From the IMG/VR virus record IMGVR_UViG_3300023083_000001, positions 124,001 to 188,000 of that record: 64,000 nt of DNA. One strand, given 5' to 3'. The position numbers were made by a program, and so were the translations under genes. The notes under the pieces are model-generated. The model searched no databases. It was given only the letters and a program-made list of their open reading frames with translations, and had not been told where the DNA came from. Positions 7,643 to 59,761 of this stretch are shown here, in pieces. Positions within the stretch are counted from its first letter, which is position 1; each line of letters begins with the position of its first letter.

Positions 7643-7680
7643 ATAGAATGCCAGGAGGTCACCCTCCTGGCTCTATGCTG
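7643..7680. terminator. Bidirectional hairpin terminator
   Basis: GCCAGGAGG-TCAC-CCTCCTGGC then TCTATGCTG, between convergent genes. Confidence 0.7.
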
Positions 7681-7947
7681 TTAGAAAGGTAGATCAAACC
7701 ACGGATTACCGTTGGCTTCATGACTACACGTAGCCCGGTTACCCGTTCGGACCACAGGTATTCCGTTCCATGTCATCCAACCAGATCCTTCAGCCATCAC
7801 AGGCCCTGCGTGAGCGCCCGTACCGTGCCCAGCAACGCCGTCCCCTAACAAGGAGATAGGTTTGCCGAAGATGGTCCATGGGATAGCTCCAGGGCCTGTG
7901 ATGACACCACCAGCGATCGATTCGCTAACCAGTGAAATAGCAACCAT
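7681..7947 (-). CDS. PAAR-like tail spike tip protein
   Basis: 88 aa with GKPISLLGD..GH....H...M.EGS...NGIPVVRTG.RATCSH, the PAAR repeat pattern with His/Cys metal ligands; TAATG overlap with the spike gene. Confidence 0.85.
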   Translation of the reverse strand: MVAISLVSESIAGGVITGPGAIPWTIFGKPISLLGDGVAGHGTGAHAGPVMAEGSGWMTWNGIPVVRTGNRATCSHEANGNPWFDLPF

Positions 7948-8765
7948 TATGTCGACCCTTGGAAACGAGGTGTTTTAAGAGTAGTGAGTGCCGAAGTCCA
8001 CGTCTGCTTCGTACCACCCACCGTAATACTGGCCAGAGTACCAGCGTCCATCAACAGTTGTTTACCCGCAGAGATCTTGATGTCGCGCACAGCTTTAGCC
8101 ATGATGTCTTGCGGGGCGTACATGTTGATGTCTTTCTGATCCAGCTTGACGAACGTACCTTTACTGTTCTGCAAATGAATCAGGTTCAACTTACTGACCA
8201 GATTGATGAAGTTACCAATGTCGTCAGTCAGCGTGAACTCACCTACAGCGAAGTCAAAGAACATTTCGTACAGGTAAGGTTCACCGTTAGCCTTGCACGA
8301 CCGGAACGCCAACTTCTTGCTATGACTGGAGAATTCGAACCAGTACATGTTGTCAGTATTTAGAACGGTGGACTTCTCGTCCTTAGTAGCGCTGATACCG
8401 AAGACGATGGTTTCCAGCTTACGCAGGTTATCGTCAAGCCCCAACGTGGACCAGTAATACTTGTCATTGTCCGCCACTTGCCACAACTGGATACGCTCAC
8501 CACGACGCACATCGGGTGCTGTCAGGCGATTACTACCCATTGGTAGCCAAAAGGCTCTGAGGGTGTTATCACTGATGATCCCGCCCTGAACTTCAACGTC
8601 GTTGAGGTCCTTGGTCTTAAATTGCATCTGTTCCGGGTTACTGGTGACCTCACCATCGCGCATGGTCGACCATTCAGTGGGGAACCAAGCGATCTCTTTA
8701 GATTGAAGATCCTTGTTCTCCGCAACCATGCCCAGCGCTACAGGTCTGAAAACAGAAACATCCAT
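7947..8765 (-). CDS. Baseplate central spike (phiKZ gp164-like; OB-fold plus beta-helix)
   Basis: RLTAPDVRRGERIQLW OB-fold motif, beta-strand repeats at the C-terminus, directly upstream of PAAR. Confidence 0.8.
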   Translation of the reverse strand: MDVSVFRPVALGMVAENKDLQSKEIAWFPTEWSTMRDGEVTSNPEQMQFKTKDLNDVEVQGGIISDNTLRAFWLPMGSNRLTAPDVRRGERIQLWQVADNDKYYWSTLGLDDNLRKLETIVFGISATKDEKSTVLNTDNMYWFEFSSHSKKLAFRSCKANGEPYLYEMFFDFAVGEFTLTDDIGNFINLVSKLNLIHLQNSKGTFVKLDQKDINMYAPQDIMAKAVRDIKISAGKQLLMDAGTLASITVGGTKQTWTSALTTLKTPRFQGST

Positions 8766-8836
8766 GGGGACTCCTGGAGTGTAATTTAACGAAGTAGCCT
8801 AATGTTACAGCCGAATGACCAAGGAGTCATCCAGAG

Positions 8837-11266
8837 ATGTTTTTCGAATATATTAAGATGGTGGGATGTAACCGAACTTCCTTGAACGGGAAGAACGAGA
8901 TTGTCATCCGACCTACCAGTAAGACCCAGATGGTTCTTGGTACCAACTCAAGTGGTAAGTCCAGTCTCATCGAGATTGCATTCTCGCCTTTACCACCCGA
9001 TGAGAAGTGGTTTGACAAGCCTGGCTCCTTGGAGCAGACCATCAGTCATAAAGGCCGGGTTTACAAACTCGTCTCACGCTTTGGTGAGAAGAATTCTTAC
9101 TCTTTCATAGTAGATGGCGGGGAAAACCTGAACAAAGGTCGTAACGTCACGATGCAGTTGGAGTTGGTCAAAGAGTACTTCGGCTACACCAAAGACATCC
9201 ACGCATTCCTGACTGGCCGTGTGAAGTTCACCACCATGAACTCCAAGCAGCGTCAGGACTGGATCAGCCGTTTCTCAGCGGTAGACTTCAGCTTTGCGTT
9301 CTCGGTCTACAATCGTTTCAAACGTGAACTCACGGCAAACAACAACATCGCAACCTACCTCACCAAACAGTTGAATGATGCACGTCAGCGTCTGATGGAT
9401 CCGGTTGATATCACAGCCATGCGTATAAAGGCTGATGAGGCTCATGAAACACTTGAGCTGTTGATGCGTGAACCACGCCATGGGCAAAGTGCATTGAGCG
9501 ATGAAGACCTGGCTCAATTAGTTGAGACTTCGTTGGATCAACTCAGCCACTTTATCATGACCGAGTATCCGTACACCGAGAACGTCGGTGATCTGGAAGG
9601 TCTGGTCAATCTGCGTGCTAATGCCGAGATGTCACTACACCAACTGCAAGGTGAGTTGAAGGCACGCGGTGAACGTCTGTCCGATTGCGAGCATAAGAAG
9701 CAGCGGATGGAAGCATTGGGGCAATACAGTCCTGAAGAGCTACAAGCTTCCATGGACTCCATCAAGGCGATGTTAGACGCTATCCCACCACAAGTGAGCG
9801 AAGTACCTCCAAGTCTCTTGCGTGACCATCAGAAGGTCATCAACGAGCTACGTCCGATCATTGGTAAACTCGGTGCGGTACGTAAGACCAACAACGACGT
9901 CATGGAGGTTAACAACCGTCTCCTGGAGCGTAAGTTGATGTTGGGTCGCTACATGGGTGCGGTGGAAGACTTCACTCGACAGATCCATCAGATCCATCAA
10001 TGTGAAGTGGTGTCCTGCCCTTCCTGCAAGACTGAGTTCAAACCCGGTATCGAACCCGGTAAGCTTGAAGAACTGGAATCTCGCATGGGGAAAGGTCAAG
10101 CGCTGATCAATGAGCTGGAAGCTGAAGTCGATCACATCGACGAAGAGTTTCAAAGCACTGCGCACATTGCTTCGGTTTATGCCGAACTGGATCAAGTGCG
10201 TGAACGTTACCAGAACGTGTGTCCTGGGTTGTTTCAATACCTGGACACATTCGGCTGGACAAAGCTGGGTCGTGGCTTGAACGAGAAGATAGCCCTGTTC
10301 GCTAAGGACTGTGACCGTCAGGAAGACCGCGATCAGAAGCAGCGTCAATATGACACGTTGAAGTCACGGCTCGATCAGGTAAAAGCCGAAGCTGGCCAAA
10401 CCGTGCAAGTGATCGAAGACTACAAAGCAGCGCTTGAAGATTACAACGCCTTGTACCTGGTCCATCAGAAAGCCAGCGGCCGTAAACAAGGTCTGGATAA
10501 GGCATTGTTGAGTTGGCAGAAGTACATCGACCTGTTTGAACGCTCTGAGCAACTGTACGAGAACTTACGATGTGAGATGATCAACTACTGCAATCATCAA
10601 GGTGACTTGATGGTCGATGAAATGATCAAGAAGACCAAAGTTACCATGGGTGTTCTTGAATCAGCGTTGGCAGAGAATGATCAGAACCTTAATATCGTCC
10701 AGGACTTGGAAGCCCAGGTCAAGAGAGCACGGATTGAGGAAGAGTCACGTCGTGTTCTGGTAGAAGCTTTGTCTCCCAAGACTGGGTTGATTGCAGAGCA
10801 GATCACTGCGCAGATGTCATCGATTGTGGGTGCGGTTAACCAGATGATCAAACGCGTGTGGGGATATCCGTTGTTCATCAAGTCAGGTGATCCTGAAGAT
10901 ACCGAGATGGACTACAAACTTCCCGTAGTGGTCGACGGTAAAGAACGTGCAGACATTGCCGTGGGTAGCAGTTCAGTTAAGGACGTCGTTGATCAGGCGT
11001 TTCGTTGGACAGGTTACTACTGCATGAACCTGACCGACTATCCGTTGTTCCTGGATGAGTTCGGTTCAACCTTTGATGAAGCGCACCGTCACAACCTGAT
11101 TCCGTTGATCAAGGATCTGGTAGACGATGCTCGGTTCTCTCAGGTGTTGATGATCAGTCACTCGTTGGATGGACAGACGTCTTTCCCAATGTCACAGACC
11201 ATCATTCTCGATGATCGTAATATCAACTACCCGCATGCTTACAATCAACACGTGGAGTTCGCTTAG
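8837..11266 (+). CDS. sbcC: SbcC/Rad50-like SMC ATPase (phiKZ gp165-like)
   Basis: Walker A GTNSSGKS, coiled coils, zinc hook CPSC, Walker B LFLDE, H-loop ISH. Confidence 0.9.
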   Translation: MFFEYIKMVGCNRTSLNGKNEIVIRPTSKTQMVLGTNSSGKSSLIEIAFSPLPPDEKWFDKPGSLEQTISHKGRVYKLVSRFGEKNSYSFIVDGGENLNKGRNVTMQLELVKEYFGYTKDIHAFLTGRVKFTTMNSKQRQDWISRFSAVDFSFAFSVYNRFKRELTANNNIATYLTKQLNDARQRLMDPVDITAMRIKADEAHETLELLMREPRHGQSALSDEDLAQLVETSLDQLSHFIMTEYPYTENVGDLEGLVNLRANAEMSLHQLQGELKARGERLSDCEHKKQRMEALGQYSPEELQASMDSIKAMLDAIPPQVSEVPPSLLRDHQKVINELRPIIGKLGAVRKTNNDVMEVNNRLLERKLMLGRYMGAVEDFTRQIHQIHQCEVVSCPSCKTEFKPGIEPGKLEELESRMGKGQALINELEAEVDHIDEEFQSTAHIASVYAELDQVRERYQNVCPGLFQYLDTFGWTKLGRGLNEKIALFAKDCDRQEDRDQKQRQYDTLKSRLDQVKAEAGQTVQVIEDYKAALEDYNALYLVHQKASGRKQGLDKALLSWQKYIDLFERSEQLYENLRCEMINYCNHQGDLMVDEMIKKTKVTMGVLESALAENDQNLNIVQDLEAQVKRARIEEESRRVLVEALSPKTGLIAEQITAQMSSIVGAVNQMIKRVWGYPLFIKSGDPEDTEMDYKLPVVVDGKERADIAVGSSSVKDVVDQAFRWTGYYCMNLTDYPLFLDEFGSTFDEAHRHNLIPLIKDLVDDARFSQVLMISHSLDGQTSFPMSQTIILDDRNINYPHAYNQHVEFA

Positions 11267-11299
11267 CATACAGGGCGGGGAAACCCGCCCTGTATGCTA
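11264..11299. terminator. Perfect 16-bp hairpin with GAAA loop (CATA..TATG type)
   Basis: TAGCATACAGGGCGGG-GAAA-CCCGCCCTGTATGCTA, with no U-tract. Confidence 0.7.
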
Positions 11300-11365: not shown

Positions 11366-11779
11366 GTGAATAAGCATGAACTCAAAGTGATGTACTTGAA
11401 ATTCTTAAAGGATACAGGGCTACGTGTGGAAGAAGTTGCGTTGGGGTTCGGTGGCGCGTTAGTGATGATGGGTCTACGTGATGAGACCAGTGATCTGGAT
11501 CTGGATATTCCTGAATGGCGTTATCAGTTGTTCAAAGTTAATGAGTATCCGATCCACACCACGCCTATCGGTGAGTGCATGGATTACAACGGGTTCATCT
11601 CGGTGCATCGATCCACTTCGCAAGATTGCGTTTACATCGAAGGGGTGCGCGTGTACAGCCCCATGTTGCTGTTAGAATCTAAACGCTTCTTGTCGACGCA
11701 CCCTGATCGTAAGCAAACCAAGAAGGCACAAGACCTAATCGACATCGAACGCTTGAGAACTTACATCGTTAATCAGTGA
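11366..11779 (+). CDS. Minimal Pol-beta-family nucleotidyltransferase-like protein
   Basis: GFGGALVMMGLRDETSDLDLD (GG..D.D motif) and C-terminal K...D.; GGAGGG SD with GTG start. Confidence 0.7.
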   Translation: MNKHELKVMYLKFLKDTGLRVEEVALGFGGALVMMGLRDETSDLDLDIPEWRYQLFKVNEYPIHTTPIGECMDYNGFISVHRSTSQDCVYIEGVRVYSPMLLLESKRFLSTHPDRKQTKKAQDLIDIERLRTYIVNQ

Positions 11780-11780
11780 G

Positions 11781-11830
11781 CGGCATACAGGGAGAGGCTC
11801 ACGCCTCTCCCTGTACACTTCTTTTTTTGT
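11781..11830. terminator. Asymmetric bidirectional terminator
   Basis: TACAGGGAGAGGC-TCAC-GCCTCTCCCTGTA; + side ends TACACTTCTTTTTTTG, - side ends TGTATGCCG. Confidence 0.75.
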
Positions 11831-11834
11831 GCTG

Positions 11835-16774: not shown

Positions 16775-16812
16775 CATACATGGGAGGTGGACAAAGCCAC
16801 CTCCCATGTATG
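16775..16812. terminator. Bidirectional 16-bp hairpin (CATA..TATG type)
   Basis: CATACATGGGAGGTGG-ACAAAG-CCACCTCCCATGTATG between convergent genes, with no U-tract. Confidence 0.7.
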
Positions 16813-17678: not shown

Positions 17679-17783
17679 ACTTAAGACTCCAACGATGTTA
17701 AGAATAGATAAACCCATAGCAGATGCTATTTAATTACCAGGTAGCTATATCCTGTGTAAACAATTTTCCCGGAGTACCGCCCA

Positions 17784-23513: not shown

Positions 23514-23555
23514 TCCGACGGGGAAACCCGTCGGAGCTACACTTCTTTTTTTTGT
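23514..23555 (+). terminator. Terminator with TACACTTCTTTTTTTT tail
   Basis: TCCGACGGG-GAAA-CCCGTCGGA then GCTACACTTCTTTTTTTTG. Confidence 0.8.
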
Positions 23556-23592: not shown

Positions 23593-24588
23593 ATGGCAAG
23601 TCGTCTGGCTTCTACAGTGTTTCAAGGCAGCGCGAAAGATGCCATGGTGGTGGAGGACGCCTACAAAGTCTCCACAGCCGAAACTCGCAACAGTTTGTTT
23701 GACAGTGCCAAAGGTATCTACGGTGATGCAGTCAGTGGGTTGTACGCTAACAAAGGTTCTATCCGTGAACTGGCCGCCGTAGTCTTAGCAGCCAAAGCCG
23801 GGACCATCAGTAAGGCAGACATGCTGGAACGCTCCCTGAGCGCGTTAGGTTCGTCCCTGCCTAGTCTCTTAGGTCAACTGGGCGGAACGCTTAAGAACAC
23901 CATTGCAGGCTTTCTGCCGGACGGTGTTGGCGACACGATGGGTGTCGTCTACAATAACGCTCAGCTGATCCTCAGCGTGGCTAACATTTCCAACGCTCAG
24001 GACTCTGCGGAGTTCTTGGCTGAGTTAACCGGTAACAGCGATCTACTGAAGGTCGTGAACATCGGTGCCGAGAGTGCGATCTTTGGGGGTATCCTTAAAG
24101 AGTTGATGTCGTTTGGTATTCCTGAACTGATGGATGATGTTATCGATCAGATCCAGAATGAGACGGTCAAGGCTAACGCACTCGCTTACTTGTCGACCTC
24201 AGCTGTCAATGGTTCTGACTTGGTCATGACCAACAAGATCATTGATGTGATTGGTCTGACCGCTTTCCTTGAACAGAACCCGGACGCAATCAACCGTACA
24301 CTGTCAAGCTTCTTCTTTGGTACGCTGGATACCGTTGATACCTATCCTGCCAAACGCATCGAACTGCTTGCGTTACTGACTCGCATTGATGCTCATTGGT
24401 CTGAGTCCTTGCGCAATGGTGCTTACATCAAGAACCTGGAACCGTTTACAGTCTGTAGTCCTGATGCAAAGACCTTGATGCTGATGGCAGCGCCTGAACG
24501 CACGTTAACGTTGGCCGCTGCAAAGTATCCACGTAACAACATCAATTCAATCATCAAAGGTTTGTACCCAGACGCTTACATTCCCTGA
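23593..24588 (+). CDS. Putative virion structural protein
   Basis: 331 aa, GAGG SD, TATG about 35 nt upstream. Confidence 0.55.
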   Translation: MASRLASTVFQGSAKDAMVVEDAYKVSTAETRNSLFDSAKGIYGDAVSGLYANKGSIRELAAVVLAAKAGTISKADMLERSLSALGSSLPSLLGQLGGTLKNTIAGFLPDGVGDTMGVVYNNAQLILSVANISNAQDSAEFLAELTGNSDLLKVVNIGAESAIFGGILKELMSFGIPELMDDVIDQIQNETVKANALAYLSTSAVNGSDLVMTNKIIDVIGLTAFLEQNPDAINRTLSSFFFGTLDTVDTYPAKRIELLALLTRIDAHWSESLRNGAYIKNLEPFTVCSPDAKTLMLMAAPERTLTLAAAKYPRNNINSIIKGLYPDAYIP

Positions 24589-24630
24589 CAGCATACAGCC
24601 CCGGCCTTGGCCGGGGCTGTATGTCGTTTA
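24586..24630. terminator. Bidirectional CATA..TATG hairpin; near-copy of 59715-59761
   Basis: TGACAGCATACAGCCCCGGCC-TTG-GCCGGGGCTGTATGTCG. Confidence 0.75.
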
Positions 24631-26592
24631 TGGCCGATCGGTAGGTAGGGACAACGCTTTAATCAAGTCCCCTGTCATACCGCTCATCAAACCAGACGCA
24701 ACACGCGCTGCCGATTTCCATTGATTGAACTCAGCACGGCTACGCGCCATGTTAAGCTGCCATTTACGGGTGACGTTGATCTGAGTCTCCAAAGGAATAC
24801 TCGCCAAGGTCGCCAGGTAGTCCGTATACTTGTTGTCCTCACTGTACGTCGAGGCTGCAAGTGCACTCACCACACTGTTGTTACCCAAGTTACCACCACG
24901 CAGCGCTTGTTCTGCTAACGTGAACGCACCCTGTACGTTACTGAAGCCAGGGTTGATTGGCATGGACATGATGGTAGACAGATCCACAATCGTCACTGTC
25001 ACATCGATACCCAAGCACTTACCACCCTTAGCCCAACCTACATCGCCCACCCCCCGTTCGATGGAAATGGATTCAACCATCCCTTCACGGATTTGAGTAC
25101 GACCTTGGTTGAACACTTCCAGCAAGAACGGACCATCGTAACTAGCCCGGCCTGTCGCACGAGGTAGACCCAGTGCCAAGATAGCGGACAATGGCAAGAA
25201 GATGTTTTTCATCCTCACCCAGTCATCAGCTGCCCACGCTCTGAGTGGAATCGTAAAGCTGGTCCGGTTAAGGTCAGCTGAAGAGGATTCGTACAGTTTC
25301 TGGATGTCAGCAAATGCACCACCTGCCACCGCCATGAAGCCTTCGACCTGAGCAGCTTGTAGAACGCCGTTCATGATGTCTGTGGCTGCACCTACGATGG
25401 CTTGTACCGGTCCACCGATGTTACCATCGGCAAAGTTGAAACGTGCCATACGCGCCTTTGCAGACGCCCCGTTGATGGTGGACTGAATACTGGATTCAGT
25501 AGCGCTGTTATTGAAGCTTTCACTTTGCGTCCCCGTGTGGTTTACACGGAAGGTTACAAAGTCAGCACCCATCCTGGCTTCAGCTTTACCTTGCTGAACC
25601 ATCTCACTGACCCAGCTTTCTTCAGTGGTGTCTTCATCGGGTGTGCTTGGTTTCTTCGTGTCGTATTTACCTGAAAGTGCCAGGTAGGCTTTCTCGTATT
25701 CCTTGAGACTTGCCCCTGGATCTTTCAAGTCCTGGATACCGGCATCAATACCGTCGTACATGATCTTGGCAAACTCTTCAGCGCGCTTGGCTGGATCGTT
25801 TGTCAACCCTGCAAGTTTAGCGTCGAGCATCTCACGATACTTGTTAGCCAGACGTTGCGGTTTAGTGCTGATGCGGAACACATCGATACCACCGTCTTCC
25901 ATCACGATGTTACCGAGGATTCGGTGCATCTGCGCACCGTCGGCTTTATCAGGTACAGCCAATGGATCGAAGTAACGCTTCTGCTCATCGTTGACGTAGT
26001 GAGGACTCATCCCCATGTTAACGAACAGTGCATTGACCATGTTACTGACCGCGTACCAATAGAGGTACATGGTGGGTTTGAGGTAGTAGTACTTGGAGCG
26101 AGGCATACCGGTGAAGAAGTTGATCATCGATCCTGCCAGAATAAACGGCTGGAACGGAAGAGTTCCGATAACACCTGCTACTTGACCGACTTCAAACCAG
26201 ATACTCGGTGCACGACCAGTCCTTGCTACAGAGCCTGCATAGACGTTGTAGAAGTTCCCGAAGAAGGTTGTCATCGAGTTGAATTTAGGGACACCCGCAC
26301 GAATGTGGATCAGTTGCGAGTTATCGTCCAGTACTTCACTCCACCAACGGCCGACTCCATCGGAGCCACTGTAGATGGATTTGTGTTTCAGGTCACAGTT
26401 AGCTGTAAACTGTGAAAGGGGGTTCATTGCAAAATGGCCACCCATGGAGGTGTCGGTAAACTTCCGCGTGGCTGTCGTGTGGTAGCGTCGACGATTGTTC
26501 ACCGCATCGGACAATGCACTTGGAGGTGCAAGGAATGCATGTCCCGCCCATGTGCGGTCTAGCAAATACTTACGTGCCATATGGACGTCCAT
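24628..26592 (-). CDS. Tail/baseplate structural protein (phiKZ gp182-like)
   Basis: Directly downstream of the gp181-like gene; tube-initiator-like motifs (G.VESISIERG...IDVTVTIVDL). Confidence 0.7.
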   Translation of the reverse strand: MDVHMARKYLLDRTWAGHAFLAPPSALSDAVNNRRRYHTTATRKFTDTSMGGHFAMNPLSQFTANCDLKHKSIYSGSDGVGRWWSEVLDDNSQLIHIRAGVPKFNSMTTFFGNFYNVYAGSVARTGRAPSIWFEVGQVAGVIGTLPFQPFILAGSMINFFTGMPRSKYYYLKPTMYLYWYAVSNMVNALFVNMGMSPHYVNDEQKRYFDPLAVPDKADGAQMHRILGNIVMEDGGIDVFRISTKPQRLANKYREMLDAKLAGLTNDPAKRAEEFAKIMYDGIDAGIQDLKDPGASLKEYEKAYLALSGKYDTKKPSTPDEDTTEESWVSEMVQQGKAEARMGADFVTFRVNHTGTQSESFNNSATESSIQSTINGASAKARMARFNFADGNIGGPVQAIVGAATDIMNGVLQAAQVEGFMAVAGGAFADIQKLYESSSADLNRTSFTIPLRAWAADDWVRMKNIFLPLSAILALGLPRATGRASYDGPFLLEVFNQGRTQIREGMVESISIERGVGDVGWAKGGKCLGIDVTVTIVDLSTIMSMPINPGFSNVQGAFTLAEQALRGGNLGNNSVVSALAASTYSEDNKYTDYLATLASIPLETQINVTRKWQLNMARSRAEFNQWKSAARVASGLMSGMTGDLIKALSLPTDRP

Positions 26593-26595
26593 CCC

Positions 26596-26630
26596 AAAGA
26601 GAAAGAAACGGGTGGGAGTTACCCCACCCG
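26596..26630 (-). terminator. Intrinsic terminator/attenuator between the gp181-like and gp182-like genes
   Basis: CGGGTGGG..CCCACCCG followed on - by TTTCTTTCTCTTT. Confidence 0.6.
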
Positions 26631-26639
26631 ATCTGTGGT

Positions 26640-39382: not shown

Positions 39383-39417
39383 CCACTCCCGGCTCGAAAG
39401 CCGGGAGTGGCTGTATG
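39383..39417 (+). terminator. Hairpin followed by CTGTATG
   Basis: CCACTCCCGGCT-CGAA-AGCCGGGAGTGG, with no U-tract. Confidence 0.65.
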
Positions 39418-43997: not shown

Positions 43998-44048
43998 CGA
44001 CATAGTCCCCTCCTACTGGCGTGAACCAGTAGGAGGGGCTTTATGCTG
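43998..44048. terminator. CATA..TATG-type hairpin
   Basis: CCCCTCCTACTGG-CGTGAA-CCAGTAGGAGGGG then CTTTATGCTG. Confidence 0.7.
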
Positions 44049-45554: not shown

Positions 45555-45567
45555 TAAGTAAACCAAA

Positions 45568-46625: not shown

Positions 46626-46682
46626 GCGAAACTGGTATGTTAGCAACCCTGGAAGGGCCAACCTCTGGGGAAGCTGACACGT

Positions 46683-46732
46683 CATACATCGGGGGAGCAA
46701 TCCCCCGATGTATGCTCCATCTTTATTTTTTG
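46683..46732 (+). terminator. 14-bp CATA..TATG hairpin plus delayed U-tract
   Basis: CATACATCGGGGGA-GCAA-TCCCCCGATGTATG...CTTTATTTTTT. Confidence 0.75.
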
Positions 46733-48863: not shown

Positions 48864-48869
48864 TGCAAA

Positions 48870-48909
48870 CACCAGGGCTTCGGCCCTGGTGATACACTTC
48901 TTTTTTTGT
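48870..48909 (+). terminator. Terminator with TACACTTCTTTTTTT tail
   Basis: CACCAGGGC-TTCG-GCCCTGGTG then ATACACTTCTTTTTTTG. Confidence 0.85.
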
Positions 48910-49017
48910 TTTGTTATGACCTACTGAGAGCTTCTCTAAGCCTCTTCTTTACATTACAGCCATACTGATCGGTTGTTTAGTTTATAATGCCTTAGGATTG
49001 ATTGCAGAAGGCCATAG

Positions 49018-49053
49018 GGCATAAAGCCCGGCACTAGGCCGGGCAGTATGTTG
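49018..49053 (-). terminator. CATA..TATG-type hairpin after the tube gene
   Basis: GGCATAAA-GCCCGGC-ACTAG-GCCGGGC-AGTATG. Confidence 0.65.
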
Positions 49054-52005: not shown

Positions 52006-52024
52006 CAGGAGTTACTCCCAAACA

Positions 52025-52119
52025 TGTTCTGCGCAGAACAGTGAAATCGAGGAATGTTATGGCCAGCAAACTCCAGCCAGGCGTATAGCCTAACATGTGG
52101 AGTCAGCATAGTATTTTTT
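52025..52119. promoter_or_regulatory. Divergent control region: 16-bp palindrome and face-to-face TATG motifs
   Basis: TGTTCTGCGCAGAACA at 52025-52040; GAATGTTATG on + (TATG 52058); AAAAAATACTATG on - (CATA 52107-52110). Confidence 0.45.
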
Positions 52120-52178
52120 GTTTCTGTTTACAGCAGCAATTGTAACTTTTTAACTTACATAGGTAGGAGACAAGAACA

Positions 52179-53084: not shown

Positions 53085-55712
53085 ATGGTCAGTTCAACCG
53101 ACTTTCTGGTCGATCATGCGTACCGAAATGTCTGGTGTTCGCCCAGTCAGGATCGGCAGCATATCGTGGCTCCGAAACGAGTCACCAAGCGTAATGGTGC
53201 GATAGCAAACGTTTCGATCGGGATGCGGGTGTGGAACTTACCTTCTCCTACCGACTGGTACCACGTCTTTGCCATCGGAGACCTCCCACCTGAATTGGTG
53301 GGGATGGAACAGATCAAGGATAAGTGGGTATCGGCACGGGGTCATTCGATTGCAACTTCGTTGTTGATTGACACGTACCTGAATAACGGCTTGCGCATTC
53401 CTACGATGCACGTCTACTTCCTGTACACCTACGGCGGCTCAATGATGGTGGCTATTAAAGACACCAAGCAAGTAGCTGACCTGGGTATCGTGCAGCCGTT
53501 CATTCGCTGGCGCAGTAGTTCGTACTTTGATGACCCTACCAGCTCCATCCCGAAGAACAGTGGGATTGAGATCGAAGGGATTACGCCGGCTACACAAGCG
53601 GCGTTCAGCCTCTTTCAAGCGAAGTGGCGTGCTGCCAAGTTAAAACCCGGTTATGCCATGGCGTACGTCAATGGTCGTCGGGTCAAGGACCTGAACGCTA
53701 CCACTGTCAAGTTGGGCGACCACATCGAGTATGTCCGTGACGCTTCTGTGAAAGAAGTCATGGAGATCAAACTCAAGGCGCTGAAATCATTCGACAGTAT
53801 CCGGGACAACAAAGGGAAGTACCTGATCCCTCGTCCTGGTCTGGGTGTCGAGATCGACTACGCTGATGATGTCGATGTGTTCCTGTTAAACTACAAGTTG
53901 GCTGCGGCGTATAACGGCCTGTACTACAACCAGAACCAAGTCGACGCAGTACGGATGGTGACTCACCGCGATTATTCGCTGCCGAGCACGTACGTAAACA
54001 GTCTGGTCAACATGACGGCTGACTGGATCTGGAATGACGACCTGCGCGCTGAAGTGATCGTTCGCCACAGCGGATGGAAACGTAAGTTGGTGGATGAGGC
54101 TCACCGGATCAAGGAGTTGTTCAAACTCCCCGAAGCTAAACGTCTGGATGCAATGATCGGTACACAATCGGTCAGCGTCTGGAAAGCTGCGGAACTGGAA
54201 AACAGCCCTTATGTCAAACTCATGGGCGCTGCTGACGGTACGATCACTCGCGGTATGGTCGAACAGGCGTATGGTTACAATGCCATCTCTCGCCTGATTG
54301 GCGACACTCCGTTTAAGATCCCTGCTCCAAATAACGGTTGGGTACAACTACCTCGTGGTCTGTGGGAACTGTCCACGGTCTTCGAATACGACACTGCGGG
54401 TAAGTTGATCAACTGGTACGTCCACGACAACTCGTTGCAGTACCCGATCCGTAACCCATTGACCTGCCGTTACATCGAAGCTTACTCAGGTCGGGGCGGG
54501 ATTGGTTTGACCACGGTCTACGACAAGAAGGTCGTGCCACTGACTACGGGTGTTGACTACCGCTATTACCAGGCGGACATCAACAACGGTGTACCCAAGA
54601 ACAACTGGAAAGATGTCACAGGCGATACCAAGTACGTCACAGTTGCTAATGGCGTAGCTACGTGGAATGTGGACCTGACTAAGAACAACGTGGCTGTGAA
54701 GAACTCGCAGAACTTCCTGGCGTACACGGTTGATCTGAACTACCAAGACGACCTGTTGGCGTTTAGCGTCAATGCAACGGAAATCAAGGTAGGGTTGGTT
54801 CCTGGTGGTGGTGTCTTGGACATTCCTCCAGGGCAGATGGATATCTTCCTCAATGGACATGGTCTGGTCTACAATGTGGACTACTACATCGAGTGGCCGA
54901 TGGTCTGCATCGTTAACAAATCGTACCTGATCGACGGTCCGGTGCAGAAGGTTACCGTTCGTGGTCGTGGGTTCTGTAACACGGACTTGACGTTGGAACA
55001 TGTCAAGGATTCAGGTTGGGTCAAATACGGTCAGATCAGTCACAACGCAGCCTTCAACGTGCGTGATGACAAAGTCACCGTGGTTGAGATCGCCGGCGCG
55101 ATCTACGACCGCTCGGAAGTGAAGTTCAGTGAAGACGGTTTGCAAGTGATGACGACAGTCCTCAATGGATCGCCGTATCAGATCAAGCAGCCGATCATTC
55201 CGATGATGGGTTACACGGATACCGACACGTACACATTGCGTGCTCAAGCTGAAGCGATTGATGCTGAAGTGGAAGGGTATCTGTCCATCGGTTTGCCTGA
55301 ACCTAAACCTACCGGTCCTAATCCGATCCCGGCCTGGTACGCAGTCTTCAGTCCATTCACCACGAAGTTGATCTGGGACATGCTCAACGGCATCTTGCCG
55401 ATGGATGAGTTCAAGGGCGAGTACAGTCTGGACTTCCTCAAGGAAAGGCTGATTGGGTATGAGTGGATCTTGCAGTTTGATCCCGCTCTTAAAGGTGTCG
55501 ATGAGAATTACATCGTCATCGATCCACACCCTGAATCTGTTCCGATTGAGCTGAACATCTACCAGTACCGGCTGCTGGATCGTGCTCTCCAGGTTTTCCT
55601 CAACAATAACGTGACTCTGAACCGCCATACCGTCATCGTTGAAGAAGGCTTTGAACACGAGACTGATGACCACCCACATCCGCACCGCACGTGGGAAGAA
55701 GTCGGAGCATAA
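53085..55712 (+). CDS. Virion structural/baseplate protein (phiKZ gp27-like)
   Basis: 875 aa; NVWCSP.QD.Q, MVTHRDYS, YGYNA; synteny. Confidence 0.72.
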   Translation: MVSSTDFLVDHAYRNVWCSPSQDRQHIVAPKRVTKRNGAIANVSIGMRVWNLPSPTDWYHVFAIGDLPPELVGMEQIKDKWVSARGHSIATSLLIDTYLNNGLRIPTMHVYFLYTYGGSMMVAIKDTKQVADLGIVQPFIRWRSSSYFDDPTSSIPKNSGIEIEGITPATQAAFSLFQAKWRAAKLKPGYAMAYVNGRRVKDLNATTVKLGDHIEYVRDASVKEVMEIKLKALKSFDSIRDNKGKYLIPRPGLGVEIDYADDVDVFLLNYKLAAAYNGLYYNQNQVDAVRMVTHRDYSLPSTYVNSLVNMTADWIWNDDLRAEVIVRHSGWKRKLVDEAHRIKELFKLPEAKRLDAMIGTQSVSVWKAAELENSPYVKLMGAADGTITRGMVEQAYGYNAISRLIGDTPFKIPAPNNGWVQLPRGLWELSTVFEYDTAGKLINWYVHDNSLQYPIRNPLTCRYIEAYSGRGGIGLTTVYDKKVVPLTTGVDYRYYQADINNGVPKNNWKDVTGDTKYVTVANGVATWNVDLTKNNVAVKNSQNFLAYTVDLNYQDDLLAFSVNATEIKVGLVPGGGVLDIPPGQMDIFLNGHGLVYNVDYYIEWPMVCIVNKSYLIDGPVQKVTVRGRGFCNTDLTLEHVKDSGWVKYGQISHNAAFNVRDDKVTVVEIAGAIYDRSEVKFSEDGLQVMTTVLNGSPYQIKQPIIPMMGYTDTDTYTLRAQAEAIDAEVEGYLSIGLPEPKPTGPNPIPAWYAVFSPFTTKLIWDMLNGILPMDEFKGEYSLDFLKERLIGYEWILQFDPALKGVDENYIVIDPHPESVPIELNIYQYRLLDRALQVFLNNNVTLNRHTVIVEEGFEHETDDHPHPHRTWEEVGA

Positions 55713-55757
55713 ACCCAAGGAGCAGGTAATCCTGCTCCTCACATCGAGTTAGAGATT

Positions 55758-57479
55758 ATGGCCGAGGTTGAGAAAAAGTTATCGAACGGTGACACCGTCA
55801 TCTACTTTGAAGGTAAGCGCCGTAAGATCGAATTCAATTTGGACGACATCTACAAATACCGTCTGGTTGATGACGGTAGCGCCATTGTTCGTGGTAAAGG
55901 CACTTACGTCCCCATGGAAGGTGATCGGGTCTGGGATTGGCAACTGGGTTTCTTCCGCGTTGCGCGGGTAGACCTGACTGACTATCACGTCGACTTGACT
56001 TTCTGGGAAGCACCGCAGGCCGGTAGCGATATCGACCTGGAAGACAAGCTGTTGGGTGTTGGTCCTGGTTACACGTCTGAGTCGTACCGTGTTTACATCG
56101 ACAGCACGGTGTTCCCACACCGTCTGGACATGAACAGTCGCCTGCGCGCGTACGGCAGTGGCGCCAAGGAAGTACGGATCTTCATGGGTGTGAACGTTAC
56201 CGACACCGGTGAAGTCATCTCCCAGTACTACAATGCCAACACCATGGATTACGTCGGTGATGCAATCCCGTTGGAAGTGGTTCGTACCGATGATCCAAAC
56301 AACCTGGCGATCAAGTCTCCACGGTCAGCTTGGACTACCAAGGATGTAGCCGACGGTGAGTTGGTCACGGCTGTGGTTTACAATGACCAAGGCAGTGTGA
56401 CTGACATGTTCAAACTGTTGGTGCAAAACACCAACGTTGTTCGTCACCCGGAAGACGCGGATAAACGTGTCCGTGCTATCGAGTTGATCAGTCCATACTT
56501 GTCGAGCAGCGAGCCTAACACGTTGCTGGTACCTCTAAACGTCACTGTCGCTACATTGGCAATGCGGGCGAAGGTCACCTACATTGATGGCAGCACCGCC
56601 ACCCTGGACGTCACTGATGAAACCGCTAATGGAAAGTTCATTCTCGGCGGTTTGAAGTACTGGTCACCATCGGTGTCTGGCCAGGAACAGGAATTGACCT
56701 TGTTCTATCAGCTGTCGGATGGGGAAGAGTACTCCTATCTGCAAGGTGAGACTGCCAATGGCAAAGTCAAGCAGACGTACAAGATCCGCGCCAAAGATGT
56801 GGACTACGCATACAGCCTCAAGCTTTATGCATTCCCGGCTTGGATCAGCGGCGTTCAAGGCTACGGTCTGGAATACTGGCTGTACGATCTGACTCGCAAG
56901 GTGGCCCGTAAAGTGCCGAAAGCGGCTATCAGCCTGGGTACCGATGGTGCTCCATTCGACGGTCTGGATTACACCTCGACTCAACACGTGAAGTTTGGCG
57001 TGGACTTGTCGGTAGTCGATGTCGCTTACGGCGACGCTACACACGCACAGTCGATGCAGATTGCATTGCTGCGTGATGGTGGTGTGAACCTGAGCAACTG
57101 GAAAGTGAAGTTTGCTGGCAACCAAACCGACTGGTTCGGCGATGGCCTCGTGGCTAAAGTCAAAGCAGGCAGCAATGGTTTGAGCACCGTCAACTTCGGC
57201 CTGGGTCTTACTGACCAAGCCGCGTGGCTTGAGAAAGTGTATTACAGCGCTTCGCCGTTGTACGACATCCAGACCGAACCCCGTGCACCTGCTCCAACGC
57301 ACTTCATCGTAGTTACGAAAACGCGTACTGTCGAAGTGCTGATCAGTCAGTGGAAAAACGACATCACGTTCATCAACGATCTGACCGAAGGCCAGACGAT
57401 TTACCTGAAGTGGATCAAACGCCTCGCAGGCGGCGATCTACAGCTAGGTGTCTCGGGCTTCCCGGTTCATCAGGTGTAA
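55758..57479 (+). CDS. Virion structural/baseplate protein (phiKZ gp26-like)
   Basis: 573 aa, beta-rich, located before the terminase; synteny. Confidence 0.7.
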   Translation: MAEVEKKLSNGDTVIYFEGKRRKIEFNLDDIYKYRLVDDGSAIVRGKGTYVPMEGDRVWDWQLGFFRVARVDLTDYHVDLTFWEAPQAGSDIDLEDKLLGVGPGYTSESYRVYIDSTVFPHRLDMNSRLRAYGSGAKEVRIFMGVNVTDTGEVISQYYNANTMDYVGDAIPLEVVRTDDPNNLAIKSPRSAWTTKDVADGELVTAVVYNDQGSVTDMFKLLVQNTNVVRHPEDADKRVRAIELISPYLSSSEPNTLLVPLNVTVATLAMRAKVTYIDGSTATLDVTDETANGKFILGGLKYWSPSVSGQEQELTLFYQLSDGEEYSYLQGETANGKVKQTYKIRAKDVDYAYSLKLYAFPAWISGVQGYGLEYWLYDLTRKVARKVPKAAISLGTDGAPFDGLDYTSTQHVKFGVDLSVVDVAYGDATHAQSMQIALLRDGGVNLSNWKVKFAGNQTDWFGDGLVAKVKAGSNGLSTVNFGLGLTDQAAWLEKVYYSASPLYDIQTEPRAPAPTHFIVVTKTRTVEVLISQWKNDITFINDLTEGQTIYLKWIKRLAGGDLQLGVSGFPVHQV

Positions 57480-57488
57480 GTCGATACT

Positions 57489-57522
57489 CTGGGGGAGGGA
57501 ACTCCCCCAGGTGTCTATGCCG
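57489..57522 (+). terminator. Hairpin followed by TCTATGCCG
   Basis: CTGGGGGAG-GGAA-CTCCCCCAG; TATG at 57516 could also be the terminase promoter. Confidence 0.55.
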
Positions 57523-57536
57523 CTAGGAAAATAACC

Positions 57537-59717
57537 ATGGCGATCCTTTACGAATCGGATTGGGCAAAGTACCCCACCGCGATTGTTGACCTTGACAGTA
57601 CCAATGAAAGTTGGGTCAAACAGTGCGCCAAATACAAACAAATGGGAGTGAAACATTGGTACTTCCCTTTGGCTCTTTATACGCCTTCGCTGGCAGGGAT
57701 CGATCCTCATCGTAAGGATCTGACTGAAGCGCAGATGGTTGCCATTCTGAACGAATGCGCCTGGAACCCGTGGTACGTGATCCGTGAAGTCATCCGGGTC
57801 CCTGCAACGTCCGGTGGTGGTTCCAACCCACTGGGTGCTAACCGCGGTAACATCGCCATGTTCTGGTGCGTGCTGAACTCCTTCATTACTTACGTTCAGC
57901 AAATCCGTCAGACCGGTAAGTCTTTGAACACTCGTGTACTGGTGTTGTTGTTCCACCTCTTCATGGCGAGAGGTTCTCAGCACATTCTCTTTACCAAGGG
58001 TGACTTGCGTAAGGATGAGATCAAGTACTACAAGTTGATGCGGACGTTGATCCCAAACTGGATGTGGGAACTCACCAAGGAAGACACCGATAACCAACAC
58101 GAGTTCACCACCGCCGCTAACGGGAACAAGACCAAGTCCTACGTTCCACAAGGTGACCCTGAAACAGCGAACAGTGTTGGTCGTGGTACCACGCCTACAT
58201 TTGTTAACGTCGACGAACCACCGTTCTTGCCGTACGCTGAGATTTCGATCCCATCCCTGATCGCAGCCACCACGGCCTCTTTCGACGAAGCACGTCGTAA
58301 AGGTAAGATGCACGCCATTCTTTACACCACAACTGCTGGTGACTTGTCCACTGACTCAGGTCGTTATGTTTACGACATGATCAAGAAGAAAGCGATGTTC
58401 TTCACCGAACTGTTGTTTGACTGCAAGAACCGTGCTGATGCCGTGAAGATGATTCTGGCTAACAGTCGCTCTGATGTACCACACGTGGACATTTCGTTTA
58501 ACCACTTGCAGTTGGGTTACAGTGACCAATGGTTGCGTGAAAAGATTGCGGCTGTACCTGCTAAACGCGATCAGATCAAACGAGACTACTTGGGACAATG
58601 GACATTCGGTAGTACCTCGAACCCGATCCCTGAAAAGATCATGAACAAGATTCGGGACAATACCAACGAATGGCCCATCGTTACCAAGGATGAAACGCAA
58701 GGTTACACGATGCGTTTTCACGTACCGATTGACGAATGTAAACGTCGCCGTTCAGTGATGGGTATGGATACCTCGAACGCGGTAGGTCGAGATGCCATTA
58801 CCGGTGTCTTTGTGGATGTGGAGACCGGTGAGACGTTGTGTGCGTTCATGGTGAGTGAAGCAACCCTTCACAGATTCACTGAGTGGCTCGCACAGATGTT
58901 TGTCGACTTCCCTTACATGACGATGATCCCTGAAGCCAAGTCCTCCTGGCACGGCATCATGGACCACCTGCTGGCACTGTTGCCAATGAAGGGTATTGAC
59001 CCAGGTCGTCGTATCTACAGTCGGATTGTGCACAACGCAAACGGCAGTGAATCGGAACGTCGTGATTACCGTGACTTCTCAACTGGCGTACCTACTGAGC
59101 GTAAGTACTTCCCTTTCCGTAATGACTTCGGTTTCCCAACCAACGGTCCATTGCGCGAAACGTTGTACGTAACGATCCTTCGGGAAGCCACTCGTGATAG
59201 CGCCACGTTAATTCGTGACTCGATCATTATCGATGAGCTGTCCAGTCTGGTAGAACGTAACAACCGTATCGACCACAAAGCCTCAGGACACGATGACCAC
59301 GTCATTTCCTGGCTCATGGCTAACTGGTTACTGCGCAACAGCTACAACCTCAGCCACTACGGTATCGATCCTGCGAAAGTGTTGTCCAGGGTTAAAGTCA
59401 CCGCAGCGGGAGATAATCCAAAAGAGCAGGCGAAGTTGATCAAGGAAGAACGACTGAAACTTGAGATCATGGCGTTGGAGGAAAGGTACGAGAACGCTCA
59501 AGGGATCATGGAGCAGAAGTACCTGGCCGCCAAGATTGCATCCTTGAAGACAGACCAACGGACTGTGGACGATGATGCCGGCGGCGGTAGTATCGATAAG
59601 ACGTCGCATAACGCCAAGGTCACCAAGCAGAACGAACGAGCGCTCAATGCTCCTCGTAACCGTGAAGGTGTCTTTAGCGGCAGTGGTGGTCTTCGGTTTA
59701 ACATGAGACCACGTTGA
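57537..59717 (+). CDS. terL: Terminase large subunit (phiKZ gp25-like)
   Basis: Walker A RQTGKS, Walker B VNVDE, motif III TTTA, nuclease GMDTS...HDDHVISW; uninterrupted. Confidence 0.92.
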   Translation: MAILYESDWAKYPTAIVDLDSTNESWVKQCAKYKQMGVKHWYFPLALYTPSLAGIDPHRKDLTEAQMVAILNECAWNPWYVIREVIRVPATSGGGSNPLGANRGNIAMFWCVLNSFITYVQQIRQTGKSLNTRVLVLLFHLFMARGSQHILFTKGDLRKDEIKYYKLMRTLIPNWMWELTKEDTDNQHEFTTAANGNKTKSYVPQGDPETANSVGRGTTPTFVNVDEPPFLPYAEISIPSLIAATTASFDEARRKGKMHAILYTTTAGDLSTDSGRYVYDMIKKKAMFFTELLFDCKNRADAVKMILANSRSDVPHVDISFNHLQLGYSDQWLREKIAAVPAKRDQIKRDYLGQWTFGSTSNPIPEKIMNKIRDNTNEWPIVTKDETQGYTMRFHVPIDECKRRRSVMGMDTSNAVGRDAITGVFVDVETGETLCAFMVSEATLHRFTEWLAQMFVDFPYMTMIPEAKSSWHGIMDHLLALLPMKGIDPGRRIYSRIVHNANGSESERRDYRDFSTGVPTERKYFPFRNDFGFPTNGPLRETLYVTILREATRDSATLIRDSIIIDELSSLVERNNRIDHKASGHDDHVISWLMANWLLRNSYNLSHYGIDPAKVLSRVKVTAAGDNPKEQAKLIKEERLKLEIMALEERYENAQGIMEQKYLAAKIASLKTDQRTVDDDAGGGSIDKTSHNAKVTKQNERALNAPRNREGVFSGSGGLRFNMRPR

Positions 59718-59761
59718 CAGCATACAGCCCCGGCCGTGAAGCCGGGGCTGTATGTCGCTTA
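59715..59761. terminator. Bidirectional CATA..TATG hairpin; near-copy of 24586-24630
   Basis: TGACAGCATACAGCCCCGGCC-GTGAA-GCCGGGGCTGTATGTCG. Confidence 0.75.

What the first reader, a model, noticed from the sequence alone, without database searches (positions are those of the whole stretch)
7643..59761. U-less terminator class: GC hairpin followed by TATGYY, mostly after late or core genes
Seen: hairpins at 7650, 11264, 11781(-), 16775, 24589, 39383, 44007, 49026, 57489 and 59718 lack a U-tract on the side facing the ending gene. They instead end in (G/T/C)TATG(C/T), usually (C/T)G next. At convergent junctions the motif is often on both strands (CATA-stem-TATG). Inference: a sequence-specific termination or RNA-processing signal read by the phage non-virion RNAP, reusing the late-promoter tetramer. 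Alternatively it drives re-initiation or antisense transcription. Exception: 26609 is a late hairpin with a U-rich tail.
Basis: partly seen in the sequence, partly recalled or inferred. Interest (0 to 1): 0.7.

Follow-up and report, generated by a model that had tools for sequence, protein, structure and literature searches.

The report
Hairpin-plus-TATG terminators of a jumbo phage
The GC hairpins followed by TATG are real and far beyond chance, and they are this uncultured phiKZ-like jumbo phage's version of a conserved terminator motif already mapped by RNA 3'-end sequencing in phiKZ and 201phi2-1, so the finding is sound but mostly not new.

Summary
The window is part of a 258-kb phiKZ-like (Chimalliviridae-type) jumbo phage genome from a leaf-litter metagenome.

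- **Observation.** All 11 sites exist as described.
- **Enrichment.** Genome-wide, 79 of 176 sides of intergenic hairpins carry TATG, against 6 of 244 genic hairpin sides. TATG is the most enriched tetramer there (8x). The full consensus is C-T-K-TATG-Y-Y-G.
- **Orientation.** The motif prefers the side facing an ending gene (53/85 vs 26/91, p=9e-6). It covers 19 of 23 minus-strand gene ends and sits on both arms at convergent junctions.
- **Conservation.** It is kept at orthologous gene ends of a relative with about 50% protein identity, while the stems change.
- **Prior description.** The consensus is in register with the published phiKZ terminator motif (stem, then YTTATKYYGT).
- **RNA ends in phiKZ.** In phiKZ's published tables, 24 of 41 gene-facing hairpin-TATG sides have a mapped RNA 3' end 2-5 nt into the motif. 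None of 45 has a start site.

I conclude these are often-bidirectional, hairpin-dependent terminators in which TATGYYG replaces the U-run. Specificity for the non-virion polymerase is not shown, and re-initiation or antisense firing is not supported. It is a new member of a known kind. The overlap with the late-promoter word TATG remains an open mechanistic question.

The parts
7650..7680 (+). Hairpin 7650-7671 followed by TCTATGCTG (TATG at 7674). It ends gene 6369-7637. The minus side has a U-rich tail facing gene 7681-7947.
11264..11299 (.). Palindromic CATACAG-stem-CTGTATG element. The stop codon of the SbcC-like gene 8837-11266 lies in the stem. TATG is on the plus strand at 11293 and on the minus strand at 11270.
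11784..11832 (.). Convergent junction with hairpin 11786-11815. The plus side has the conserved U-type tail CACTTCTTTTTTTGT and ends gene 11366-11779. The minus side has TATGCCG and ends gene 11835-12479.
16775..16812 (.). Bidirectional CATACATG-stem-CATGTATG element between convergent genes 16350-16769 (+) and 16821-17717 (-).
24587..24628 (.). Bidirectional CAGCATACAG-GCCCCGGC-stem-CTGTATGTCG element between convergent genes 23593-24588 (+) and 24628-26592 (-). It is one of about 10 near-identical copies in the genome.
39383..39417 (+). Hairpin followed by CTGTATGTA, after the virion RNA polymerase gene 35034-39377. Stem and flank are nearly identical in the relative G001.
44004..44048 (.). 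CATAG-stem-CTTTATGCTGC element after gene 42587-43996.
46681..46730 (.). CATACATC-stem-GATGTATGCT element followed by a T-rich run.
49020..49050 (.). Hairpin 49026-49044. The minus side TTTATGCCCTATGG faces the virion structural gene 49061-49927 (-). The plus side has AGTATGTTG.
55708..55739 (-). Hairpin 55718-55739 with GCATAA only on its 5' side, i.e. TATG on the minus strand. That side does not face an ending gene.
57488..57522 (+). Hairpin followed by TGTCTATGCCGC, after virion structural gene 55758-57479 and 18 nt before the terminase gene. The stem differs in G001 but TATGCCGC is kept.
59718..59757 (.). Bidirectional CAGCATACAG-stem-CTGTATGTCG element between the terminase gene 57537-59717 (+) and gene 59759-60997 (-). 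The orthologous junction in G001 keeps CAGCATA...TATGTTCG with a different stem.
62186..62225 (+). Hairpin followed by TTATGTTCC and then a T run (both types on one side).
23514..23553 (+). For contrast: a U-type terminator (hairpin plus CACTTCTTTTTTTTGT). Others are at 45505-45560, 48868-48910 and 62607-62650. All are on the plus strand.
26590..26632 (-).

Best explanation
These elements are the phage's main class of hairpin-dependent transcription terminators. A GC-rich RNA hairpin is followed 2-3 nt later by the conserved word TATG-Y-Y-G, which takes the place of the usual U-run. Transcripts most likely end inside or just after UAUG, about 5-8 nt past the GC core. Because CATA is the reverse complement of TATG, putting the word on both sides gives a palindrome that terminates in both directions. 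That arrangement is the rule at convergent gene junctions and is common elsewhere, where it would block antisense read-through.

Inferred mechanism: TAT|G and YY|G provide pyrimidine-then-G steps, the core of the universal elemental pause signal, at the right distance from the hairpin. The A/U-rich UAU weakens the RNA-DNA hybrid. Pausing and release would then follow without a U-tract, and without needing one particular polymerase. The TATG next to the hairpin does not act as a late promoter, plausibly because the GC stem occupies the region that would have to melt.
For: **Shown in this genome**
- TATG is enriched at hairpin flanks: 79/176 intergenic sides against 6/244 genic sides. It is the top tetramer at 8x, and G is preferred after TAT (84 G vs 24 T) although T would be more U-like.
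- The extended consensus is CTK-TATG-YYG.
- The motif side faces an ending gene in 53/85 cases against 26/91, p=9e-6. Of 79 TATG sides, 32 are compatible with termination only and 5 with promotion only.
- 19 of 23 minus-strand gene ends use it.

**Shown in relatives**
- G001 (165 orthologues, mean 49.5% identity) and phiKZ give the same statistics.
- Orthologous gene ends keep the element: T-T 25, T-other 8, none-none 97. Stems are only 26-60% identical per position, while positions -3/-2 and +4..+6 are about 70% identical.
- The same palindromes occur in phages DT01 and Xoo-sp14 (26 and 37 hits against 0-2 for the control pattern). AR9 has 11 hits against 6 control hits, and none of them is a GC hairpin.

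**Experimental, from the literature**
- 61 phiKZ termination sites share stem + YTTATKYYGT (PMC10914365), and 201phi2-1 'motif A' (n=59) resembles it (PMC11512511).
- Using part of the phiKZ supplementary tables, I find mapped 3' ends at 24/41 gene-facing and 5/38 non-facing hairpin-TATG sides. They cluster at +2, +4 and +5 from the T of TATG. No start site falls at any of 45 such sides.
- 201phi2-1 terminators bearing these motifs stop host polymerase in vivo.

**Inference:** the pause reading rests on the consensus pause G-10 Y-1 G+1 (PMC6336406, PMC6062546).
Against: - There are no RNA data for this phage: no RNA run was listed, so the 3' ends here are inferred by homology.
- ONT 3'-end positions are good to about 2 nt only, and they cannot separate true termination from trimming or cleavage.
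- 26 TATG sides do not face any ending gene, and 21 of them point antisense in co-directional arrays. 'Antisense insulation' is an assumption, although 9% of mapped phage terminators (all six phages of that study pooled) are antisense to genes.
- The pause consensus does not explain why T and A of TATG are invariant.
- Only part of the phiKZ tables was read (termination sites to 168 kb, start sites for 19.9-118 kb).
Confidence: 0.75

Rival explanations
1. One reading: the stop signal is read specifically by the non-virion RNA polymerase. Its beta-lobe pocket binds non-template TATG at late promoters. It would re-bind the same word during elongation and halt the enzyme just after the hairpin, so promoter core and terminator core are one word.
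For: - TATG is the phiKZ late-promoter core with G as +1, and it is bound base-specifically by gp123.
- This genome encodes homologues of gp68, gp71-73, gp74 and gp123.
- 9 of 16 named pocket positions are identical in the gp123 homologue despite 27.6% overall identity.
- G, not T, is preferred after TAT.
- TATG is strongly purged from coding sequence on both strands: 0.48 and 0.55 of the synonymous-shuffle expectation, z -19 and -10.
- AR9, which has a different promoter word, lacks these palindromes.
Against: - The pocket is described as incomplete in the transcribing complex.
- 201phi2-1 terminators bearing these motifs work with host polymerase.
- In phiKZ the position after TAT is G or T.
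- TATG-type terminators also follow early promoters in phiKZ (2 of 5).
- The AR9 contrast is confounded by its 28% GC (GC figure from my own knowledge, not computed here) and by a different host.
Confidence: 0.17
2. RNA processing or stability element. Polymerase reads through, a nuclease cuts in the single-stranded UAUGYYG, or 3' exonucleases trim back, and the hairpin protects the new 3' end. On this view the sites are maturation sites, not terminators.
For: ONT 3' ends cannot tell termination from processing. The conserved single-stranded word next to a stable hairpin could be a nuclease or RNA-binding-protein site.
Against: - The 3' ends lie 5-8 nt beyond the GC core rather than at the stem base.
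- Read depth drops across the sites by the papers' definition.
- The elements stop reporter expression downstream in a foreign context.
- From my own knowledge, phiKZ inhibits the host RNA degradosome (Dip protein).
Confidence: 0.1
3. A terminator hairpin immediately followed by a working late promoter (re-initiation for the next gene), or an antisense promoter at convergent and co-directional sites.
For: - TATG is the late-promoter core.
- 21 TATG sides both face an ending gene and precede a same-strand gene, for example 57516, 18 nt before the terminase gene.
- 21 sides point antisense.
Against: - 0 of 45 hairpin-adjacent TATGs are start sites in phiKZ, while hairpin-less TATGs are (23/59). 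Where a late start site lies near a hairpin (phiKZ 94330 and 101390), it uses a second TATG further downstream.
- 53 of 79 TATG sides have no same-strand gene downstream.
- Hairpin-less intergenic TATGs lack the YYG extension.
Confidence: 0.06
4. A DNA-level palindromic repeat (REP-like, cruciform or protein-binding site, or a small mobile element) unrelated to transcript ends.
For: About 10 near-identical copies exist per genome. The family variant is genome-specific: GCC(C)GGGCTGTATG here and GCC(C)GGGCTTTATG in G001.
Against: Many members have unrelated stems with compensatory pairing and only the flank conserved. They sit almost only at gene ends, with strand-specific preference for the ending gene. 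In phiKZ they coincide with RNA 3' ends.
Confidence: 0.02

Closest known systems
Conserved phiKZ terminator motif (Putzeys et al. 2024, PMC10914365): BCCYCCCCHWWDGGGRRGGBYTTATKYYGT, found at 61 ONT-cappable-seq termination sites
   Same: A GC stem-loop is followed, in the same register, by Y-T-(T/K)-TAT-K-Y-Y-G. It is often palindromic (CATAA-stem-TTATG), sits at gene ends and is bidirectional at convergent genes. My scan of phiKZ reproduces the statistics.
   Different: Here and in G001 the base after TAT is mostly G (84 G vs 24 T). The linker is CTG rather than CTT, so the flank is much less U-rich (T runs of 3 or fewer). ARNold-type criteria would not call these intrinsic terminators. The paper calls the conserved part 'TTAT' and does not mention TATG or the late promoter.
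201phi2-1 terminator motifs A and A/B (PMC11512511)
   Same: Motif A (n=59) is said to resemble the phiKZ motif. The A/B combination elongates the stem. I have not seen motif B's sequence, so equating it with the CATA arm seen here is my guess. These elements are functional terminators in a reporter assay.
   Different: They were tested only with host polymerase. The authors invoke antitermination. There is no analysis of the G or the YYG positions.
Canonical intrinsic (rho-independent) and bidirectional terminators of bacteria
   Same: A GC hairpin, with release a few nt past the stem. Bidirectional forms have complementary flanks (A-tract/U-tract there, CATA/TATG here).
   Different: There is no U-tract. 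A specific heptamer is conserved instead.
phiKZ late promoter TATG (Yakunina et al. 2015, PMC4666361; gp123 pocket, PMC12809450)
   Same: The same tetramer. The genome encodes the nvRNAP subunits, and pocket residues are partly conserved.
   Different: Promoter TATGs are hairpin-less and AT-flanked, and they need downstream sequence. Hairpin-adjacent TATGs are not start sites in phiKZ.
Consensus elemental pause G-10 Y-1 G+1 of multisubunit RNA polymerases (PMC6336406, PMC6062546)
   Same: TAT|G and YY|G are pyrimidine-then-G steps with a G-rich 3' stem arm about 10 nt upstream. The phiKZ 3' ends cluster at the bases before these G's.
   Different: This is a resemblance only. Pausing has never been measured for these polymerases, and the pause consensus does not require the TA.

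Membership tests
phiKZ/201phi2-1-type conserved terminator motif | GC-rich stem-loop of about 7-16 bp with a short loop | tested here: met
   Stems of 8-16 bp, loops of 3-6 nt, dG from -14.8 to -33 kcal/mol at all listed sites.
phiKZ/201phi2-1-type conserved terminator motif | 3' flank Y-T-T-A-T-K-Y-Y-G-T in fixed register after the stem | tested here: met
   The consensus of 78 hairpin-associated sites is C(64%) T(85%) K TATG Y(99%) Y(96%) G(64%) Y/T. It is in the same register as the published logo and as my phiKZ scan.
phiKZ/201phi2-1-type conserved terminator motif | Located at the ends of genes or transcription units, and bidirectional between convergent genes | tested here: met
   53/85 gene-facing sides against 26/91 non-facing sides. 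Most convergent junctions carry TATG or a U-run on each side.
phiKZ/201phi2-1-type conserved terminator motif | Mapped RNA 3' ends at the element | not testable with these tools
   No RNA run was listed for this metagenomic phage. The feature is met in phiKZ itself (24/41 gene-facing sides).
Canonical intrinsic terminator | U-tract (5 or more U in 8 nt) immediately after the stem | tested here: not met
   TATG-only gene-facing flanks have a longest T run of 1-3 and a mean of 3.6 T in 10 nt, against 6.6 for the U-type. The consensus scan does not flag them on that side.
phiKZ-type late promoter | TATG with transcription starting at the G | not testable with these tools
   There are no RNA data here. 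In phiKZ, 0 of 45 hairpin-adjacent TATGs have a mapped start site.
phiKZ-type late promoter | Sits upstream of a same-strand gene | tested here: not met
   Only 26 of 79 TATG sides have a same-strand gene downstream. 32 point into a convergent gene and 21 point antisense.
Sequence-specific hairpin-independent terminator (T7 class II type) | Acts without a hairpin through a fixed word on a single-subunit polymerase | tested here: not met
   The extended word TATGYYG is found essentially only next to hairpins. Hairpin-less intergenic TATGs show no YYG. The polymerases here are multisubunit.

The most novel reading that the evidence does not exclude
One four-base word, TATG, would be both 'start' and 'stop' for the phage's own multisubunit polymerase. 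In an AT-rich, meltable context, the beta-lobe pocket captures non-template TATG and starts RNA at the G. Two to three nt after a GC hairpin, the same capture of the non-template strand would stall the elongating enzyme so that the hairpin releases the transcript. The very strong purge of TATG from coding sequence in this lineage (about half of expectation on both strands) would then reflect avoidance of both accidental starts and accidental stops.
Probability: 0.17. Interest if true: 0.75.

Novelty: new member of a known kind. Interest (0 to 1): 0.4.

Why it matters
Nucleus-forming jumbo phages transcribe their genomes with two unusual multisubunit polymerases, and how those enzymes terminate has not been studied biochemically.

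This genome shows the family's conserved terminator word in a GC-rich background, where it is clearly not just a degenerate U-tract. G is preferred after TAT, pyrimidines are obligatory at +4/+5, and a G follows. The word is conserved across genomes whose proteins are only 25-50% identical. That gives a defined heptamer to mutate in vitro. It also gives a practical rule for annotating transcription-unit ends in uncultured Chimalliviridae, where standard terminator finders fail.

The coincidence with the late-promoter core, and the strong genome-wide avoidance of TATG, pose a testable question about how one word relates to both initiation and termination.

Tried and rejected
- **Close cultured relative:** megablast of the virion polymerase gene against the phage collection found nothing. 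Only protein-level relatives exist, at 38% identity or less.
- **RNA evidence for this phage:** two run searches listed only leaf-litter DNA metagenomes and no RNA run.
- **Known RNA families:** Rfam and tRNA scans of the window were empty.
- **Supplements:** the supplementary tables of the two journal papers are not held. The bioRxiv supplement was used instead and only partly read (parts 7, 12, 13), so the phiKZ counts cover termination sites to 168 kb and start sites for 19.9-118 kb. Some table rows have shifted sequences, so I used positions and strands only.
- **First hairpin criterion:** folding 50 nt upstream of every TATG at dG <= -12 was too loose, since 25% of genic sites passed. I replaced it with a compact-stem finder.
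- **Polymerase specificity:** I classified phiKZ termination sites by the class of the nearest upstream start site. The test is underpowered, with only 5 early cases, so no conclusion follows.
- **Gene size as a proxy for temporal class:** borderline result (p=0.05).
- **TATG as a start codon of small ORFs after the hairpin:** rejected. At convergent sites it would read antisense, and the hairpin occupies the ribosome-site position.
- **Gene calls:** these came from my own codon-score heuristic (294 genes, 89% coding), so a few small genes are missed. This can misclassify some sides as 'not facing a gene'.


Full report
**What the window is.** The window is bases 124001-188000 of a 258,357-bp virus record with terminal repeats. 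It was assembled from a leaf-litter metagenome. It has no close cultured relative. Its virion RNA polymerase gene (35034-39377) is at most 38% identical in protein to phiKZ-like phages of Pseudomonas and Xanthomonas. The window encodes virion polymerase subunits, tail sheath, baseplate, terminase, virion proteins and an SbcC-like protein. Elsewhere the genome encodes homologues of the phiKZ non-virion polymerase subunits gp68, gp71-73, gp74 and gp123, and of the major capsid protein.

**The observation.**
- All eleven sites are as described.
- I called genes with a codon-score heuristic (294 genes) and found compact hairpins genome-wide.
- Of the sides of the 88 intergenic hairpins with dG <= -12, 79 of 176 carry TATG between the loop and 9 nt past the stem. 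Only 6 of 244 sides of genic hairpins do.
- TATG is the most enriched tetramer at hairpin 3' flanks, 8-fold over intergenic background. After TAT the next base is G 84 times, T 24, A 14 and C 9, although TATC is the commonest form genome-wide.
- Anchored on TATG, the 78 hairpin-associated intergenic sites give C-T-K-TATG-Y-Y-G. Purines are almost absent at +4 and +5, and G is at +6 in 64%. Hairpin-less TATGs show no such extension.
- The gene-facing TATG-only flanks have no T run longer than 3, and the consensus terminator scan does not call them on that side.
Sites 46681 and 62186, and the 5' CATA arms at 44004 and 55711, also belong to the class.

**Orientation.**
- Among hairpin sides that face a gene ending within 80 nt, 53 of 85 have TATG, 19 have only a U-rich tail and 13 have neither. 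Among sides not facing an ending gene, 26 of 91 have TATG (odds ratio 4.1, p=9e-6).
- Of the 79 TATG sides, 32 are compatible only with termination (the next gene is convergent), 21 with either role, 5 only with promotion, and 21 point antisense within co-directional arrays.
- Convergent junctions nearly always carry TATG or a U-run on each side. Minus-strand gene ends use TATG in 19 of 23 cases.
- This distribution fits a stop signal much better than a start signal. The excess on non-facing sides is most simply bidirectional design, as in bacterial terminators with an A-tract upstream.

**Conservation.**
- A relative from IMG/VR (G001, 253,921 bp) shares 165 reciprocal-best orthologues at a mean 49.5% identity.
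- The state of orthologous gene ends is strongly conserved: TATG-type in both 25, none in both 97, TATG-type against other 8.
- Side by side, many stems are unrelated in sequence but still pair, while the flank is kept, for example TATGCCGC after 57488 and TATGCCG after 97431 and 218352.
- Per position, stems are 26-60% identical. Positions -3, -2 and +4 to +6 are about 70% identical.
- The whole-genome statistics replicate in G001 and in phiKZ.
- CATA-GC hairpin-TATG palindromes abound in phages DT01 and Xoo-sp14 (26 and 37 hits against 0-2 for a control pattern). Bacillus phage AR9, whose non-virion polymerase uses a different promoter, has 11 hits against 6 control hits, and none of them is a GC hairpin.

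**What is already known.**
- Putzeys et al. (PMC10914365) mapped 133 phiKZ termination sites by ONT-cappable-seq. They report that 61 share a stem-loop followed by YTTATKYYGT.
- The 201phi2-1 study (PMC11512511) finds a resembling motif A at 59 sites, plus a partner motif that lengthens the stem. It shows that eight tested terminators, five of which carry two co-occurring motifs, stop transcription in a host reporter assay.
- The consensus here is in register with that logo. Neither paper mentions TATG or the late promoter.
- The phiKZ late promoter is TATG with G as +1. It is necessary but not sufficient (PMC4666361). It is bound in the non-template strand by a gp123 pocket that is incomplete in the transcribing complex (PMC12809450).

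**Re-analysis of phiKZ data.**
- From the preprint's supplementary tables I took 76 termination sites (to 168 kb) and 59 start sites (19.9-118 kb) and laid them on my hairpin scan of phiKZ.
- Mapped 3' ends lie at 24 of 41 gene-facing and 5 of 38 non-facing hairpin-adjacent TATG sides.
- They cluster at +2, +4 and +5 from the T of TATG. That is at the U before the G, or at the pyrimidines before the next G, about 5-8 nt past the GC core.
- None of 45 hairpin-adjacent TATG sides coincides with a start site, whereas 23 of 59 start sites sit at a hairpin-less TATG.
- Where a late start lies close to a hairpin (94330 and 101390), it uses a second TATG further downstream.
- A test of whether TATG-type ends go with middle or late rather than early transcripts was underpowered, with 2 of 5 early cases being TATG-type.

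**Mechanism.**
- Shown: the element is a conserved hairpin plus heptamer at gene ends. Its homologue marks RNA 3' ends and not 5' ends.
- Inferred: it works like an intrinsic terminator in which TATGYYG supplies what the U-run normally supplies. TAT|G and YY|G are pyrimidine-then-G steps, the core of the consensus elemental pause of multisubunit polymerases (PMC6336406, PMC6062546). UAU weakens the hybrid. This would explain the preference for G and the activity with host polymerase.
- Not explained: why T and A are invariant.
Nine of 16 pocket positions are conserved in this phage's gp123 homologue, and TATG is purged from coding sequence to 0.48 (sense) and 0.55 (antisense) of the synonymous-shuffle expectation. 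The purge is similar in G001 and much weaker in phiKZ. Against the idea stand the closed pocket in elongation and the host-polymerase result.

**Verdict.** The termination reading is supported, the re-initiation reading is not, and polymerase specificity is open. The element is this lineage's member of a terminator motif already described in phiKZ and 201phi2-1. The new points are its clearly non-U-rich form, the extended TATGYYG word with obligatory pyrimidines, its conservation at orthologous sites with changed stems, and the explicit overlap with the late-promoter core.

**Limits.** There are no RNA data for this phage. Gene calls are heuristic. The phiKZ tables were only partly read, and their 3' ends have about 2-nt resolution.

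Noticed in passing
whole genome G000; window examples 11819-11832, 23540-23553, 45546-45557, 48897-48908: Runs of 8 or more T occur 16 times on the plus strand and never on the minus strand (23:0 in G001, 15:3 in phiKZ). All 20 TTCTTTTTT words are on the plus strand directly after a hairpin, within a conserved tail (C)ACTTCTTTTTTTTGT. U-type terminators are therefore a plus-strand-only class, and minus-strand genes rely on the TATG type.
   Followed up: partly
G000 7234, 17970, 37462, 54649, 102177, 191029, 201925, 213828, 218767 (none inside the window): A plus-strand-only promoter-like motif, AAAA-N-TTTACA-N2-CATACATTAC. It often lies 20-35 nt after a hairpin's T-run or TATG flank. It resembles the phiKZ early promoter (T-rich element plus TATATTAC box) seen in the published table. 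It is probably the early (virion polymerase) promoter of this phage.
   Followed up: partly
all coding sequence of G000 and G001: TATG is at 0.48 (z -19) and its complement CATA at 0.55 (z -10) of the expectation from synonymous-codon shuffling. G001 gives 0.46 and 0.55, and phiKZ only 0.89 and 0.93. Control tetramers TATC, GTAT, TGTA and ATGT are at 0.93-1.03. This lineage avoids the word inside genes far more than phiKZ does.
   Followed up: yes
window 24587-24628 and 59718-59757; G000 30035, 43091, 48344, 76063, 107893, 226309, 232999: About 10 hairpins per genome are near-identical copies, and the variant is genome-specific: GCC(C)GGGCTGTATG in this genome and GCC(C)GGGCTTTATG in G001, even at orthologous junctions. 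This suggests concerted evolution (gene conversion or cassette spread) of terminator copies.
   Followed up: partly
window 24620-24634, 49010-49023 (minus strand); G000 102105-102160, 107889: Some elements carry two TATG words in tandem after the stem (TATGTCGTTTATGG; TTTATGCCCTATGG). In phiKZ a second, downstream TATG is the one used as a late start site at two such places.
   Followed up: no
window 11264-11266; G000 17914, 54597, 97431, 200651, 218352: Stop codons are packed against or inside the element. TAG lies in the stem at 11264, and the pattern TAA-(N)-CGGCATA-stem recurs. Part of the apparent conservation downstream of TATGCCG (..YTTA) is therefore the reverse complement of a stop codon.
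   Followed up: no
window 52006-52178: The divergent region between the tail-sheath operon (minus) and gene 52179-53081 (plus) holds hairpin-less TATGs on both strands: 52058 on the plus strand, 52110 and 52161 on the minus strand. They lie 105-156 nt from the gene starts and are candidate late promoters.
   Followed up: no
window 26640-33299 (minus strand): A 2219-aa open reading frame, the largest in the window. It ends at the only U-rich minus-strand terminator in the window. Its function was not examined.
   Followed up: no
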